Source: Pavona decussata
Lineage: Eukaryota
DNA: 64,000 bases
Assembly (NCBI GenBank): GCA_977016875.1
Contig: CDRNST010000199.1
Location: forward strand, 620,001-684,000
Direction: 5' to 3'
The notes below the pieces were generated by a model. That model was not told the origin of the DNA and ran no database searches. It was given only the letters and a program-made list of their open reading frames with translations. Both the position numbers and the translations under genes were made by a program. Shown one piece after another: positions 7,201 through 13,200 of this stretch (positions are counted from its first letter, which is position 1; each line of letters starts with the position of its first letter).

Positions 7201-10200
7201 TATTAACAATGGAAGTTGTTAGCCTTATTCAACCTGTGGGAGAAGGGGAGGAGTTAAAAAGTGCCTGCTCTAAGTATAACACTTAACTATAAGATCTGAA
7301 AGGACGCCTGCCAGCTGTCCAGAACAAATGACGTAATTTCCACGTCATATGAGTTCCTCATTAAGTTTAGCAGACATCAAGAGAAACAGCTTAAAACTCT
7401 TTACCATTCAAGTATTAATATCGTAGTTTCAATGGTCTCGATTTTTCTAAGGTTGTGATGGGCAATGGCATGAAACCAGAAAAGGCCAACTATAACTTTG
7501 TTGGAAGAGTTCGAAAAAGTCAGTCACATTTATTTTTCCACAGGATATTACATGTACATAGAAACGTCTAGTCCTCGAGTACAGGGAGATCATGCAATAC
7601 TAATCAGCCCCAAGCAGAGCTTCTGCGGAATCAAGTGCCTTAAATTCTCCTACCACATGTATGGTGCAACGATTGGGAGACTGGATGTGACAATCAATAG
7701 CACAATAGTGTTCTCTAAAAGTGGTAACCAAGGCAACAGGTGGCTTGATGCAAGTATTACTATAAATTACTCAGGAGTGTACCCGGTAAGAAAAATTTTC
7801 ATCTTTGCTGGAAACAATTTCTATTGTCACTTTGGTATGTTTCTAGTCATTTGCGATCCTTTAGTATGAAAACGCTATTAATCTACTATGTACTTTGCTT
7901 ATTACGCAAAATTATTTCACCTCTAACACAGCACCACAATTTTTTGAGACACTAAACACCTTATCATAGAGGAAGAACTCAATCTTAACAGTTATACATT
8001 AACTTATTCAGCCTCTGTAAAATAGGAGCCAGGGTCCATAGGCCGTCTCGTTGCTCATGAAATGGCTTTTATTAGTCATGATAATGATGATGTAATTTGA
8101 GAATTATCGTCTCGGTCAGTATTTAAAACTTACGACAATTGTTTTTTTTTTTTCTTTTTTTCGTTTGTTTTTGGTTCGCTGCTTATTATAGTAAAATTCC
8201 AAGGTGATTAGCTAAAGCGGAACAAATGACATTTTAAATTGGTTGTTACTGGTTTGAATAGCCTCTTGGCGTGACTACGCAGCACTTGATTCAAAAACGG
8301 TTGTCAGTTGAACGGTATAAACCATGAAGGATAGGACCCAACAGCTTTCTTTGAAACGTTTGCTTTCTTCTTGTTAGAAAATAAAAGGACGTGCAGTTTT
8401 TAGGCCTTAAAATTTAAACATTTCTCGCGGAAAAAGACGAAAACACAAAATATGCAGTTGGTGGTTAGATCGCCCCATAACTCCATCAGATCGCATCTTT
8501 TACGATTTACGCTTTGCACGAGACAATTTTTTTAATCGATTAATCAAATGTATATATTCACAGACGGTAAGCACCTCAACTTATACAATCTTCCATCTAC
8601 CTCAGGTAAAATTTAGAGGAGAAAGAGGAAGTAGCTACACCGGCGATATCGCAATCGATGACTTTTCTTTGCAGTCGGGATCTTGTCCTTCAGGTAAGTG
8701 CTTCAAAATTACAATAACAACACCGTTTAGAAGGTAAAACAAAATAAGTAACTTCTTGAAATACACGGTTAGCAATCAGCAGCGTGAAGCAGGCAAGTAC
8801 GGAAATATACCACGCATGTACTGTAAAAAAAGAATCAATTTTGTGTTCGCTATTGTAGGTCATAATTAACTTGCAGAAATATGGCAGCCAGCGCGAAGCG
8901 AACTCTAAGTTACTCTTTTTCAACGAATAATGGTAATGTAAAATTAAAATAATGAATTTATATATTAACGCTAAGTTACAAAACAAATGGAACTATAATC
9001 TCCGCAGATCTGATAAACACAATGAAGTGTATATTAAAGGGTGTTGATATTCTAAGCCAATTCCTTCTTAAAAAGTCTTGAAGTCAAGCAGTTAACTGTC
9101 CAAACAAAGTCGTGCATTCTTGTTTTTGTACTGATTTCGTAATTATTTCTCATTTCAGTTACAACGCCTCGACCTCCAACACCATCCCCTCCCGGTAAGT
9201 ACGTTTTTCAACACACCTCAGCTTATTGTCCTCATTTCCTACCGAAGTATGTCTGTCTGGAGCCAACATTTATGAGAACAATATTTTCCCTTAATGCTTA
9301 ACTGATAAACAGTCATTACATTACATGTTCTTTTACTGTTCCTCTGCTATAGCCTTTTGGAAGACCTTCCAGAACTGGTGGGCCAACAAAACGAAACAAT
9401 GTCAATAAGCTGTGAACTAAAGGAGTTTAGAGCGAAGTCTGTGTAGTATTAACAAGAATATTATAAAATGAAACTTCGTGTTCACTATTAATTTTTTCGG
9501 AACACTCCTTTAACACTTTTTATCCGACGGACAGACAGAGAAAAAGAAGTTCGCTTAAGAAACAAGAAGACAGGAAAACTTATAAACATAAAAAATGTAA
9601 CATAGGAATAACGTAAACCGGGAGCAAACAGAAAAGAACAAGCAGAATAAATCCTACCGAATGTTTGAAACTGGCAAGCGGTAAAAACGTCGACAACTTG
9701 AGCCAAAATTGAGAACCTAAACTGAGAGAACTGACAACTAAATTTCTTGCTCTTGCAAATATATATATTTGCACCAATTAGTCCCTAAGAAACGCAAAAT
9801 AACAAAAAAAAAACTACAAGTGAAAACACAGATGTAAAACAATGTCAAGCAGTCAACTGTCCACAACCAAGTCGTTCATTCGTGTTTTTGTACTGTTTTC
9901 GTAATTATTTCTCATTTCAGTTACAACGCCTCGACCTCCAATAACATCCCCACCCGGTAAGTACGTTTTTCAACACACCTCAGCTTAGTGTTCACATTTC
10001 CTACCGAAGCAAGTCTGTCTAAAGCCAAAATTTGTGACAGCAATATTTTCCCTCAATGCTTAACTGATATACAGTCATTAGATCACATGTTCTTATACTG
10101 CTCCTCTTCTATAGCCTTTTTGAAGACCTTCCAGAGCTGGTGGGTCAACAAAACAAACAATCTCTCACGTTATCAAATAGTATAATTATATATGGGGTTT

Positions 10201-13200
10201 TTAATAATATAGAGCACAGATATTCATTGAACTAAACACTTCATATTTTGAAATTCTGAATATAATGCAGCTGTCTACACGACATAAAACTCTCCTTTGC
10301 TACTTTTCTTACACTTCTACGTAAAACACTGACTATTCACAAACAAATAGCTTTCGGAAATAAGATTTCTACTCCCTTCCAAAATATCTTTAAACACCTC
10401 TAATATACACTTGTGACGTTAATTTTTCTTTTTGTTTCCTTTTTCTAAGTTGTTGTCGTTTTTCCTTTTTTTGTAATTGTCAATTTGTGCTAGTTCAATA
10501 TTTTGCTGTCAAAACTAGAAAAGAAGTATATCTTGTAACTTAGCTAGTCACTAACTAAAAAAAACTCTGTAAGTGTTCGTAAACCTTTGTTAACAAGTGG
10601 TTGATAATTATAACGGTGTTTATAAACGTTTGTACTTGTATTAAAAATTAAAAAAACCCTCCTACAAAGCCTTCAGGACGTAAAAAAAAAGTCTTTGGAG
10701 CTAGCACTAAACTGAAACGAAGTTGGTTATAAAAATATTTTTAAACTTGCTTGACAAATAGAGGAAGTTTTCACTGTAAAAAAAAACCTTTATTTAAGTG
10801 CGACCTCATAACAATTCATGAACTAGTGAAACAAGCTTGAAAGTCAAGTTCAAAACTGATAAAAATAAAAGGCAGTTGTTAAAGGCACTATTTTGTTATG
10901 AAACAGGGCCCCTATTAGCTTTTGGCCTTATTATCTAGGTTAATTTTGAGGACATTTCGTTGAAACTGTCCATGACAAAAACGTCCTTATTAAGTGGGTA
11001 CTCTTCATTAAAGTTAGGTTCAGCTGCTTTAGCAAGAATGCTAATTTATAATATGGTGACATGATTATCACGAGAACAATGTAAAATTGGAAAGACTTGC
11101 CTCACTCTGTGGGCCTTCCTTCCTACTTGGAAATGAGCATGAAACTGTATGTATCAATCGATTTGGTGGAGCCAACTGTTTTACCCTCATGTTTTGTTTT
11201 TGTTTTCATTAGCCACCGCCTGCAACTTTGACAACTCAATGTGTGGCTTTACACAGGACAAAAATGACACGTTTGACTGGACTCGAAATAAAGGAGGTAC
11301 ATCGTCTTCTCCAACAGGACCCTCTTCTGACCATACTTCTGGAAGCGGTAGGTTAACAAAACATAAAACTTTAGAATTATTATTTTGAAATCAGACGGCT
11401 TGTCTTCTAATTTGAAAGTAAATTTCGGGCGTTGTTAATTAACAATGAAAATACAGAACTAACGATAGTTCTTATGCTGCTACTGCTGTTGCTGATGATG
11501 ATGATGATGATGTTTATTAACAATGGAAGTTGTTAGCCTTATTTAACCTGTGGGAGAGGAGGGGGGGGTGGGGGGGGGGGGGGGTTAAAAAGTGCCTGCT
11601 CTGAGTATACCACTTAACTGTAAGATCTGAAAGGACGCCTGCCAGCTGTCCAGAAAAAATGACGTAATTTCAACGTCACATGAGTTCCTCATTAAGTTTA
11701 GCAGACATCAAGAGAAACAGCTTAAAACTCTTTACCATTCAAGTATTAATATCGTAGTTTGAATGGTCTCGATTTTTCCAAGGTTGTGATGGGCAATGGC
11801 AGAAAAGGTCAGCTATAACTTTGTTGGAAGAGTTCGAAAAAGTCAGTCACATTTATTTTTCCACAGGATATTACATGTACATAGAAACGTCTAGTCCTCG
11901 AGTACGGGGAGATTATGCGATACTAATCAGCCCCATGCAGAGGTTCAGAGGAACCATGTGCCTTAAATTCTCCTACCACATGTATGGTGCAACGATTGGG
12001 AGACTGGATGTGACAATCAATAGCAGAAGAGTGTTCTCTAAAAGTGGTAACCAAGGCAACAGGTGGTTTGATGCAAGTATTACTATATATTACTGGGCAG
12101 CGTACCCGGTAAGAAAAATTTTCATCGTTGCTGAAAACATTTTCTATTGTCATTTTGGTATGTTTCTGGTCATTTGCGATCGTTCAGTATGAAAACGCTA
12201 ATAATCTACTACGTACTTTTCTCATTACACAAAATTATTTCACCTCTGACACAGCACCACCATTTTTTGAGACATTAAACACCTTATCATAGAGGAAGAA
12301 CTAAATCTTGACAGTTATACATTAACTTATTCAGCCTCTGTGAAATAGGAGCCAGGGTCCATGGGCCGTCTCGTTGCTCTGGAAATGGGCAATTATTAGT
12401 CATGATTATGATGATGTAATTTGTGAATTATCGTCTCGCTCAGTATTTGAAAATTACGGCTTTTACACGTACCTAAATACCCTCAAAATTTGTTTCTTTT
12501 TTTCGTTTGTTTTTGGTTCGCTGCTTATTATAGTAAAATTCCAAGGTGATTAGCTAAAGCGGGACAAATGACATTTTAAATTGGTTGTTTCTAGTTTGAA
12601 TAGCCTCTTGGCGTGCATTTCGCAGCACTTGATTCAAAAAGTGTTGTTAGTTAAACCGTATAAACCATGAAGGATAGGACCCAACAGCTTTCTTTGAAAC
12701 GTTTGCTTTCTACTTGTTAGAAAATAAAAGCACGTGCAGTTTTTGCGCCTTAAAATTTAAACATTTCTCGCGGAAAAAAGACGAAAGCACGAAATATGCA
12801 GTTGGTGGTTAGATCGCCCCATAACTCCATCAGATCGCATCTTTTACGATTTACGCTTTGCACGAGACAATTTTTTTAATCGATTAATCAAGTCTATATA
12901 TTCACAGACGGTAAGCACCTGAACTTATACATTCTTCCATCTACCTCAGGTAAAATTTAGAGGAGAAAGAGGAAGTAGCTACACCGGCGATATTGCAATC
13001 GATGACTTTTCTTTGCAGTCGGGATTTTGTTCTTCAAGTAAGTGCTTCAAAATTACAATAACAACACCGTTTAGAAGGTAAAACAAAATAAGTAACTTCT
13101 TGAAATACACGGTTAGCAATCAGCAGCGTGAAGCAGGCAAGTATGGAAATATACCACGCATGTACTGTAAAAAAAGAATCAATTTTGTGTTCGCTATTGT

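What the first reader, a model, noticed from the sequence alone, without database searches (positions are those of the whole stretch)
7544..12108. Middle MAM exon diverged almost only at amino-acid-changing sites (candidate positive selection)
Seen by manual alignment of exon B copy 1 (7544-7785) with copy 2 (11867-12108): 17 nucleotide differences, 14 codons change amino acid, only 1 change is synonymous (GCA/GCG). Exon A of the same two copies shows 3 synonymous and 0 replacement changes. The changes are directional: copies 2-4 have five extra Arg (vs Q, S, C, T, I) and extra aromatics (H/Y, L/F, N/Y, S/W), while copy 1 has two N-glycosylation sequons (NST, NYS) and an extra Cys that the others lack. 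Inference: one face of the MAM beta-sandwich is diversifying in ligand specificity, as expected for immune, digestive or prey-interaction binding domains.
Basis: partly seen in the sequence, partly recalled or inferred. Interest (0 to 1): 0.78.

Follow-up and report, generated by a model that had tools for sequence, protein, structure and literature searches.

The report
Diverged first MAM exon, selection unproven
The counted differences between two copies of a protease gene's MAM-domain exon are real, but they accumulated at the same rate as the neighbouring introns and mix an old block of divergence with recent changes in one copy, so positive selection is not shown.

Summary
Exon B of MAM unit 1 (7544-7785) and unit 2 (11867-12108) differ at 17 bases in 15 codons: 14 replacements and 1 silent. 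Exon A shows 3 silent and 0 replacement changes.

The inference of positive selection does not hold.
- Pairwise dN/dS is about 2 (p 0.24-0.26).
- 17 random hits drawn from the intron mutation spectrum leave at most 1 silent codon 12% of the time.
- Flanking introns are as diverged (5-8%) as the exon (7.0%).
- Site models find no class with omega above 1.

Paralogues elsewhere on the contig split the 17 changes into three sets.
- Nine sit in a 306-base island (7620-7925), half exon and half intron. It separates "first-position" from "internal" MAM units and is shared with the upstream cassette.
- Seven are private to copy 1 (6 replacement, 1 silent). Copy 1 runs at the neutral rate (omega about 1.1), against 0.13 for its sisters (p 0.003), and its changes avoid the conserved core.
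- One is private to copy 2.

Four of the five "extra Arg" are ancestral, so they were lost in copy 1 or its type, not gained in copies 2-4.

Copy 1 is transcribed and spliced. The gene is a 4xMAM-trypsin mosaic protease of the kind already described in anthozoans. The finding is ordinary; the only hint of selection is a borderline signal at codons 27, 30 and 76.

The parts
5533..5592 (+). Pro-rich exon (phase 1-1, 60 nt) spliced onto MAM exon A1; the 5' boundary is inferred
   Evidence: RNA contigs carry ...CCAGGAGGGAACCTT directly before 6896/6897. AG/GT flanks and an open frame into A1.
6897..7031 (+). MAM unit 1, exon A
   Evidence: Pfam MAM profile 1-40, 36 bits. Splice sites checked. Protein is near-identical across the 8 close units: one replacement each in L002 (N7S) and L008 (N25H), the other six identical.
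7544..7785 (+). MAM unit 1, exon B (copy 1 of the finding). Copy-1-private changes at 7583, 7591, 7596 (silent), 7613, 7703, 7706 and 7744
   Evidence: Pfam MAM 44-124, 45.6 bits. RNA contigs lie on 7543-~7665 with the A->B junction and no variant letters at 7583, 7591 or 7613.
7620..7925 (+). Island of fixed divergence between first-position (type 1) and internal (type 2) MAM units: 9 exon sites (7620, 7624, 7626, 7631, 7634, 7765, 7772, 7773, 7778) plus 7 sites in the first 140 nt of intron BC
   Evidence: 16 fixed differences in 306 nt against 5 in 1948 nt elsewhere in the unit, Fisher p=1e-10.
8606..8693 (+). MAM unit 1, exon C
   Evidence: Pfam MAM 131-158. RNA joint 7785>8606 with GT..AG.
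9159..9194 (+). 36-nt Pro/Thr linker exon ([11 protein letters not shown]). A duplicate at 9921-9956 is alternatively included
   Evidence: RNA joints 8693>9159, 9194>11213, 9194>9921 and 9956>11213. Splice sites checked.
11213..13037 (+). MAM unit 2: A 11213-11347, B 11867-12108 (copy 2 of the finding), C 12950-13037
   Evidence: RNA joint 11347>11867.
13440..25315 (.). About 12 kb of inserted sequence inside the unit 2-unit 3 spacer. It holds inverted 600-nt segments (13433-14038 and 19942-20549), linker exon 20610-20645, and a Ty3/gypsy-type pol ORF at 21029-25108 on the minus strand
   Evidence: Self-BLAST, ORF list, Pfam RVT_1/RNaseH/rve hits, linker scan.
27258..29070 (+). MAM unit 3: A 27258-27392, B 27900-28141, C 28983-29070
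31552..33366 (+). MAM unit 4: A 31552-31686, B 32196-32437, C 33279-33366. Last linker exon at 34443-34478
34602..37848 (+). Trypsin-like serine protease domain in three exons (about 34602-34794, 36708-36863 and 37400-37848). It has an R|IVGG activation site, the TATHC, DIALL and GDSGGP motifs, and Asp at the S1 position
   Evidence: ORF translations, sequence, Pfam Trypsin 1-48, 54-102 and 125-220.

Best explanation
The two exons are the middle exons of MAM domain 1 and MAM domain 2 of one secreted mosaic protease. Its layout is a Pro-rich exon, then four repeats of [MAM exons A, B, C plus a Pro/Thr linker exon], then a trypsin-like catalytic domain.

Their 17 differences belong to three histories.

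(1) Nine changes (codons 25, 27, 29, 30, 74, 76, 78) are old differences between the first-position MAM unit and the internal, amplified MAM units. The upstream sister cassette shares them. They lie in a 306-base tract that runs from mid-exon B into intron BC. In this tract intron sites are as diverged as replacement sites. The rest of the 4.3-kb unit has almost no fixed differences between the types. I read this as a patch with a deeper genealogy in a tandem array otherwise homogenised by unequal exchange or gene conversion (inferred).

(2) Seven changes (six replacement, one silent) are private to copy 1. Here the replacement rate equals the neutral (intron) rate, while sister units run at 0.1-0.2 of it. 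All six replacements hit positions that vary across the family and spare the conserved core. This fits a loss of constraint on exposed turn residues of this one domain (inferred; weak directional selection is not excluded).

(3) One change (G77A) is private to copy 2.

Nothing in the data requires omega above 1.
For: Gene model and expression.

Paralogues on the same contig (C199:599013 is type 1; 603293, 607228 and 611503 are type 2; 615891 and C240 serve as outgroups) polarise every site.

Intron divergence c1-c2 is 0.052-0.089 and exon B is 0.070. The first 157 nt of intron BC differ at 13 sites, 8.3%.

Pairwise tests: NG86 pN/pS is 2.0 with p=0.26. ML omega is 2.28 with p=0.24, and the neutral simulation gives P=0.12.

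Site models: M2a vs M1a gives 2dlnL=0.21 on 34 paralogues and 1.03 on the 10 close units. M0 omega is 0.85 and not different from 1.

Intron-calibrated joint model for exon B: omega is 1.13 for c1 (vs 1, p=0.79; vs background, p=0.0027), 0.23 for L002 and 0.12 for type 2.

Island: 16 fixed differences in 306 nt against 5 in 1948 nt (p=1e-10). Inside it, exon replacement sites show 9/128 and intron sites 7/140 (p=0.61).

None of copy 1's 6 private replacements falls in the 38 codons that are at least 90% conserved in 26 outgroup paralogues (p=0.017).

The branch-site test on the c1 branch gives 2dlnL=0.
Against: Replacement changes outnumber silent ones on every branch considered (15:2 overall).

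About half of the exon's codons are invariant. The variable half therefore carries roughly 1.3-1.7 times the neutral rate, which a mixture of purifying and positive selection would also give.

The same variable sites are strongly constrained in the sister units, so copy 1's burst is a real shift and could be adaptive.

The branch-site test on the two type stems is borderline (2dlnL=2.71, p about 0.05, omega2 about 8, codons 27, 30 and 76).

Codon 27 changed in both lineages (Ser->Cys and Ser->Arg) although it is Ser in 92% of outgroup paralogues.

Counts are small, there are no orthologues from other species, and gene conversion violates the single-tree assumption of every model used.
Confidence: 0.6

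Rival explanations
1. True positive (diversifying or directional) selection on the exposed turns of MAM domain 1, changing its ligand, substrate or partner specificity.
For: The copy 1 branch is accelerated about 9-fold over its sister units in exon B only. Its changes avoid the core. They fall at or next to the predicted hairpin turns 23-30, 53-54 and 74-78. The domain is expressed and exons A and C stay constrained. The N51 sequon gained in copy 1 (NST) recurs as NGT/NST in distant paralogues.
Against: No test reaches omega>1. Pairwise p is 0.24-0.26. Intron-calibrated omega is 1.13 with p=0.79. The branch-site test on c1 gives 2dlnL=0. Site models are null. The silent-site deficit is within chance (P=0.12). 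The relative-rate test of c1 against L002 (6 vs 1 replacements) gives p=0.125.
Confidence: 0.22
2. The island marks functional differentiation of the first-position MAM domain (unpaired Cys27, Lys30, NYS sequon) from the internal MAMs (Arg27, Trp76). It was fixed by an episode of selection when the cassette formed and has since been protected from homogenising gene conversion.
For: The type-defining residues are identical in both cassettes: c1 with L002, and six type-2 units. None of the seven defining codons has changed since. About 3.4 changes are expected if they were neutral, giving P about 0.03; this is my arithmetic from the branch lengths. The branch-site test on the stems gives omega2 about 8 at p about 0.05, for codons 27, 30 and 76. 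The island is sharply bounded.
Against: Intron sites inside the island are as diverged as replacement sites (p=0.61). The island is asymmetric around the two patches. The test is post hoc and borderline. The function of Cys27 is unknown.
Confidence: 0.13
3. Artefact: an assembly or haplotype-collapse error, or a micro-conversion from another paralogue, created copy 1's odd letters.
For: Four of the seven private changes cluster within 31 nt (7583-7613).
Against: RNA contigs from three samples in two studies lie on 7543-~7665 without variant letters at 7583, 7591 or 7613. None of the 34 other exon-B paralogues found in the genome carries the copy-1 states as a block.
Confidence: 0.05

Closest known systems
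Anthozoan trypsin-MAM proteases (the 'tryptome' clade described in Nematostella vectensis; Babonis et al. 2019, PMC6767649)
   Same: A secreted trypsin-fold catalytic domain preceded by MAM domains, encoded by phase-compatible exons. The family is reported as expanded in anthozoans by duplication and exon shuffling, with ShK-trypsin neighbours. The genome here also holds many MAM-trypsin loci.
   Different: This locus has four tandem, recently amplified MAM cassettes with Pro/Thr linker exons, and a sister cassette joined to a different protease domain. Orthology to any Nematostella gene was not tested.
Enteropeptidase heavy chain (MAM domain plus serine protease; PDB 8zi4, 8h3s)
   Same: A MAM domain in the non-catalytic part of a trypsin-fold protease with an R|IVGG-type activation site. 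It is the top structural match of the exon-B fragment model (TMq 0.59) and a sequence hit.
   Different: Enteropeptidase has a single MAM among SEA, LDLa, CUB and SRCR domains and a membrane anchor. None of these were seen here.
MDGA1 MAM domain (PDB 5oj2)
   Same: Best solved-structure sequence match to exon B (E=1.3e-13). The YYMYIE...SP...C..F.YHMYG core is the same.
   Different: MDGA1 is a GPI-anchored Ig-superfamily synaptic protein, not a protease, with a longer loop at the position of codons 51-54.
Meprin MAM domain (PDB 7uab, 7uac)
   Same: A MAM domain attached to a protease. In meprins the MAM contributes an intersubunit disulfide (my own knowledge, not tested here), which is a possible analogy for the extra Cys27 of type-1 units. 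It is a structural hit at TMq 0.53-0.60.
   Different: The catalytic domain is an astacin metalloprotease. No evidence here shows that Cys27 is free or forms a disulfide.
Concerted evolution of tandem exon cassettes with patches that escape homogenisation
   Same: Near-identical units (copies 2-4 differ at 0-2%), a star-like intron tree and a sharply bounded island of older divergence.
   Different: Whether selection or chance sets the island's borders is not resolved.

Membership tests
MAM domain (Pfam PF00629) | Match to the family profile over its whole length | tested here: met
   Exon A covers profile 1-40 (36.0 bits), exon B 44-124 (45.6 bits) and exon C 131-158 (18.1 bits, below the cut-off on its own). 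The cut-off is 26.4 bits. Exons were scanned one by one; the joined domain was not submitted.
MAM domain (Pfam PF00629) | Four conserved cysteines and the beta-sandwich fold | tested here: inconclusive
   Cys residues are present in exon A (two), exon B (C31) and exon C (one) by reading. The exon-B fragment model (pLDDT 64) has MAM domains as its best PDB matches at TMq 0.58-0.60 but E>0.1. The whole domain was not folded.
Trypsin-fold serine protease (Pfam PF00089, MEROPS S1) | Profile match and catalytic His/Asp/Ser motifs | tested here: met
   Three exons match Trypsin profile positions 1-48, 54-102 and 125-220 (59, 31 and 114 bits). TATHC, DIALL and GDSGGP are read. Activity was not assayed.
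Anthozoan trypsin-MAM clade (Babonis et al. 2019) | The trypsin domain groups with that clade in a phylogeny | not tested
   Only the domain architecture agrees. No sequences of that study were compared.
Positively selected coding region | dN/dS significantly above 1 (pairwise or on a branch) | tested here: not met
   NG86 2.0 with p=0.26. ML 2.28 with p=0.24. Branch-site on c1 gives 2dlnL=0; on the stems 2.71, p about 0.05 uncorrected.
Positively selected coding region | Replacement rate above the neutral rate of flanking introns | tested here: not met
   pN is 0.079 against intron values of 0.052-0.089. The c1 branch has omega 1.13 with p=0.79. The apparent stem excess (omega 4.6, p=0.0008) disappears when the local intron is used (9/128 vs 7/140, p=0.61).
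Positively selected coding region | A class of sites with omega>1 (M1a/M2a) | tested here: not met
   2dlnL is 0.21 on 34 paralogues and 1.03 on 10 units.
Pseudo-exon or dead domain (complete relaxation) | Not expressed, or changes hit conserved core sites and neighbouring exons alike | tested here: not met
   The exon is spliced into RNA contigs. None of 6 private changes falls in conserved codons (p=0.017). Exons A+C have omega 0.28 on the c1 branch. The frame and splice sites are intact.

The most novel reading that the evidence does not exclude
When the MAM cassette array formed, the first-position MAM and the internal MAMs were driven apart at a few turn residues. Codon 27 changed in both lineages (Ser->Cys in the first-position unit, Ser->Arg in the internal units), alongside Met30Lys, Ser76Trp and a new N-glycan sequon. 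Selection has since kept this 300-base patch from being erased by the gene conversion that homogenises the rest of the 4.3-kb unit. The N-terminal MAM would thereby gain a distinct role, for example disulfide-linked oligomerisation through the unpaired Cys. Copy 1's later burst would be a second round of retuning.
Probability: 0.18. Interest if true: 0.45.

Novelty: new member of a known kind. Interest (0 to 1): 0.22.

Why it matters
If positive selection had been shown, this would mark a binding face of a cnidarian MAM-protease that is being retuned, and so a handle on what these abundant and functionally obscure gland-cell proteases recognise. As it stands, the value is mostly methodological. 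In tandem exon arrays, a pairwise excess of replacements can arise from mixing branches and from mosaic gene-conversion history. An averaged intron clock can then produce a spurious 'burst' (here p=0.0008) that vanishes once the local intron is used. The lasting biological point is modest. The first MAM of each cassette carries conserved distinguishing residues (Cys27, Lys30, NYS), and one copy of it has lost constraint on its turn residues.

Tried and rejected
(1) I used the mean of introns AB and BC as the neutral clock for the branch between unit types. It gave omega 4.6 at p=0.0008. I rejected this after mapping the fixed differences: they form a local island that includes intron sites.

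(2) I looked for a donor paralogue for the two patches among all 35 exon-B matches in the genome. None was found.

(3) The family-wide site models and the branch-site test on copy 1 were null.

(4) Complete pseudogenisation of exon B1 was rejected, because the exon is expressed, its core is conserved and its splice sites are intact.

(5) The zonadhesin literature gave nothing usable as a MAM-specific precedent, because the text search matched 'mammal'.

(6) The exon-B fragment model gives secondary structure only. The tool returned no coordinates, so the spatial proximity of the patches could not be measured.

Exons were searched one by one by reference. Exons were concatenated only inside local scripts, from the session's files, for codon counting.

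(8) The large representative protein search and the word-index protein search were not used, since the family scans left nothing open.

(9) The N run at 2873-3121 was left as it is.
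Full report
WHAT IS THERE

The window is G000:C199:620001-684000 of a 602-Mb eukaryotic assembly. Its ShK, MAM and trypsin gene content looks cnidarian.

On the + strand, a 4.3-kb unit is repeated four times. Each unit encodes one MAM domain in three exons.
- Exon A is 135 nt, phase 1-1.
- Exon B is 242 nt, phase 1-0.
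- Exon C is 88 nt, phase 0-1.

Each unit is followed by a 36-nt Pro/Thr linker exon and a duplicated, alternatively used copy of it.

Unit coordinates:

| Unit | Exon A | Exon B | Exon C |
|---|---|---|---|
| 1 | 6897-7031 | 7544-7785 | 8606-8693 |
| 2 | 11213-11347 | 11867-12108 | 12950-13037 |
| 3 | 27258-27392 | 27900-28141 | 28983-29070 |
| 4 | 31552-31686 | 32196-32437 | 33279-33366 |

The spacer between units 2 and 3 carries about 12 kb of inserted DNA. This includes a Ty3/gypsy-type pol ORF on the minus strand.

After the last linker exon (34443-34478) come three exons of a trypsin-fold protease. It has an R|IVGG activation site and the TATHC, DIALL and GDSGGP motifs, and it ends at 37848.

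A Pro-rich exon (5533-5592) is spliced onto A1. The true first exon was not found.

CHECK OF THE OBSERVATION

Every count in the finding is correct.
- There are 17 differences in 242 nt. They fall in 15 codons: 14 replacement and 1 silent (GCA/GCG at codon 17).
- Exon A has 3 silent and 0 replacement differences.
- Copies 2-4 carry five Arg and four aromatic residues that copy 1 lacks.
- Copy 1 carries NST, NYS and Cys27.

There is one refinement. Ser76 (TCA) to Trp (TGG) can only pass through a silent step. Standard Nei-Gojobori counting therefore gives 2 silent and 15 replacement changes.

IS IT MORE THAN CHANCE?

- NG86 gives pN=0.079, pS=0.039 and a ratio of 2.0. The one-sided Fisher p is 0.26.
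- Pairwise ML gives omega=2.28. The LRT against omega=1 gives 2dlnL=1.37, p=0.24.
- I placed 17 hits at random on the exon using the c1-c2 intron mutation spectrum (43 transitions, 41 transversions). The mean was 3.4 silent codons, and 12% of trials had at most 1.
- For the whole domain, pN/pS is 0.79.

Intron divergence between units 1 and 2 is 0.089 upstream of exon A, 0.052 in intron AB and 0.070 in intron BC. Exon B is at 0.070, exon A at 0.022 and exon C at 0.045. The 157 nt of intron directly after exon B differ at 13 sites, or 8.3%. Exon B as a whole, and its replacement sites (7.9%), therefore run at the neutral rate and not above it.

MORE COPIES CHANGE THE PICTURE

The same contig holds a sister cassette 21-28 kb upstream. 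Its exon B copies lie at C199:599013, 603293, 607228, 611503 and 615891. It is joined to a different protease domain, whose last exons are at window 1400-4265.

The copy at 599013 (L002) is 97% identical to copy 1 and shares S25, C27, I29, K30, N74, S76 and V78 with it. The next three copies share R25, R27, T29, M30, Y74, W76 and A78 with copies 2-4. So there is a 'first-position' type 1 and an 'internal' type 2, and both are present in both cassettes.

I used L002, the fifth upstream unit (L010), a copy on C240 (L009) and 24 more distant paralogues as references. With these, the 17 differences split into three sets.
- Nine are on the branch between the types: codons 25, 27 (two changes), 29, 30, 74, 76 (two changes) and 78.
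- Seven are private to copy 1: R13Q, Y16H, M23K, R53T, R54I, F67L and the silent change at codon 17.
- One is private to copy 2: G77A.

Four of the five 'extra' Arg (13, 25, 53, 54), and Y16, F67 and Y74, are ancestral. They were lost in copy 1 or in type 1, not gained in copies 2-4. Only R27, W76 and A78 are derived in type 2.

THE BRANCH BETWEEN THE TYPES

I fitted a joint likelihood model in which introns AB+BC (HKY) and the codons share branch lengths. It gave omega=4.6 for this branch in exon B (p=0.0008). I do not accept this result.

Fixed type-1 versus type-2 differences are not spread evenly over the unit. Sixteen lie in 306 nt (window 7620-7925): nine in the exon and seven in the first 140 nt of intron BC. 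Only five lie in the other 1948 alignable nt, and none in the last 680 nt of intron BC, exon C or beyond. Fisher's test gives p=1e-10.

Inside the island, replacement sites (9 of about 128) and intron sites (7 of 140) are equally diverged (p=0.61). Both types carry derived intron states, so a single donor event is unlikely.

The island is therefore a tract with a deeper genealogy in an array that is otherwise homogenised. The averaged intron clock understated its age.

A standard branch-site test on the two type stems is borderline: 2dlnL=2.71, p about 0.05 uncorrected, omega2 about 8, at codons 27, 30 and 76.

COPY 1'S OWN BRANCH

On the intron clock, exon B of copy 1 has omega=1.13-1.16. This is not different from 1 (p=0.79). 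It is different from the other units, whose omega is 0.13 (2dlnL=9.03, p=0.0027; about 0.016 after correction for six branches). L002, its counterpart in the sister cassette, has omega 0.23-0.33.

Exons A+C of copy 1 stay constrained at omega 0.28.

The six private replacements all fall in codons that vary among 26 outgroup paralogues. None falls in the 38 codons that are at least 90% conserved (p=0.017).

The branch-site test with copy 1 as foreground finds nothing (2dlnL=0), and the family's 'neutral' site class (40% of codons) absorbs these changes. The relative-rate comparison with L002 (6 vs 1 replacements) gives p=0.125.

The result is a real, copy-specific loss of constraint on variable positions. 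Its rate reaches, but does not exceed, neutrality.

FAMILY-WIDE SITE MODELS

These use my own implementation of GY94-type models, with trees from IQ-TREE.
- On 34 paralogues, M0 omega is 0.41. M1a gives 60% of sites at 0.11 and 40% at 1. M2a adds nothing (2dlnL=0.21).
- On the ten close units, M0 omega is 0.85, not different from 1, and M2a vs M1a gives 2dlnL=1.03 (p=0.60).

EXPRESSION

Contigs of four public runs of the same species, from three studies, were laid on 6300-12200. The runs are labelled only as a guess at RNA. They show GT..AG joints at 7785>8606, 8693>9159, 9194>11213, 9194>9921, 9956>11213 and 11347>11867, so they are cDNA.

Contigs lie on the 5' half of exon B1 in three runs. 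The end of exon A precedes 7543 directly, and no variant letters are reported at the copy-1-private sites 7583, 7591 and 7613.

A contig on 7735-7784 joined to exon C has one mismatch, so it could come from either type-1 unit.

These are contigs, so depth cannot be compared and absence of variants is not proven.

STRUCTURE

Only exon-by-exon references could be used. I did not submit the joined domain to any search or fold tool.

An AlphaFold2 model of the 80 residues of exon B was built with 32 paralogue rows. It has pLDDT 64, and the first 17 residues are unreliable. It predicts strands at 24-26, 29-37, 45-50, 53-59, 66-74 and 77-79.

Its best PDB matches are MAM domains of enteropeptidase, neuropilin-1, meprin alpha and an insect scavenger receptor (TMq 0.58-0.60, RMSD 2.0-2.5 A, E>0.1). 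The best sequence match is the MDGA1 MAM domain.

Eleven of the 14 changed residues (23, 25, 27, 29, 30, 53, 54, 74, 76, 77, 78) sit in or beside three hairpin turns. If these strands run consecutively antiparallel, which I infer from strand order and did not measure, the three turns point to the same end of the sandwich. It is equally what is expected of the least constrained positions.

Sequons at the N51 turn (NGT/NST) and near residue 74 (NTS/NSS) recur in distant paralogues.

COMPARISON WITH WHAT IS KNOWN

MAM-trypsin proteins are a described family, expanded in anthozoans and thought to diversify by duplication and exon shuffling (Babonis et al. 2019, PMC6767649). Enteropeptidase and meprin are the vertebrate analogues of a MAM attached to a protease.

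This locus is a new member of that kind. I found no published claim about selection on cnidarian MAM domains. That search covers only open-access text.

VERDICT

The best-supported account has two parts: an old, conversion-resistant island that separates first-position from internal MAM units, and a copy-specific relaxation of constraint on turn residues of MAM1.

Adaptive explanations remain possible for codons 27, 30 and 76 and for copy 1's burst. Testing them needs population samples and orthologues.

All likelihood models assume a single tree, which gene conversion in this array violates. All p-values are nominal and post hoc.

Noticed in passing
window 1400-5592 and 6897: The upstream cassette's protease ends in ...[21 protein letters not shown] (stop at 4263-4265). 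A GT at about 4240 would leave phase 1, which matches the phase-1 Pro-rich exon 5533-5592 that RNA joins to MAM exon A1. The MAMx5-protease and MAMx4-protease cassettes could therefore be one polyprotease transcript rather than two genes. An RNA contig extends at least 73 nt further upstream of the Pro-rich exon, but only its last 30 letters were shown.
   Followed up: partly
window 9159-9194, 9921-9956 (also 20610, 26009, 29536, 30303, 34443): Each MAM unit is followed by two copies of a 36-nt exon encoding TTPRPP(T/I)(P/T)SPP. RNA joints show the second copy being either included or skipped, which gives linkers of variable length between MAM domains.
   Followed up: partly
window 13433-25315: The intron between units 2 and 3 has taken up about 12 kb. 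It holds an inverted pair of 600-nt segments (13433-14038 and 19942-20549, 96% identical) and an LTR-retrotransposon-type pol ORF of 1359 aa (21029-25108, minus strand; RVT_1, RNase H and integrase domains). I observed it only and made no attempt to reconstruct it.
   Followed up: partly
window 5586-6261: A 99%-identical direct duplication of about 340 nt (5586-5928 and 5918-6261) starts at the donor of the Pro-rich exon, in the intron before A1.
   Followed up: no
window 6891-6902: Two in-frame acceptors lie 6 nt apart before exon A1 (TTAG|CCACAG|CATGC). RNA contigs support the upstream one at 6897. Units 2-4 read CCACCG there, so only unit 1 has the second AG.
   Followed up: partly
G000:C100:713000-826000: At least 15 further exon-B-like MAM exons (68-76% nt identity) lie in a 113-kb array on another contig. 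They have a one-codon insertion and an NGT sequon at the turn where copy 1 gained NST.
   Followed up: partly
G000:C199:481222-499032: There is another MAMx4 array (exon B at 491426, 493759, 496073 and 498795, minus strand). Next to it is a protease last exon 95% identical to the one at window 37522-37845. Its four exon B copies differ almost only at codon 23 (L/F/S/S), one of the sites changed in copy 1.
   Followed up: no
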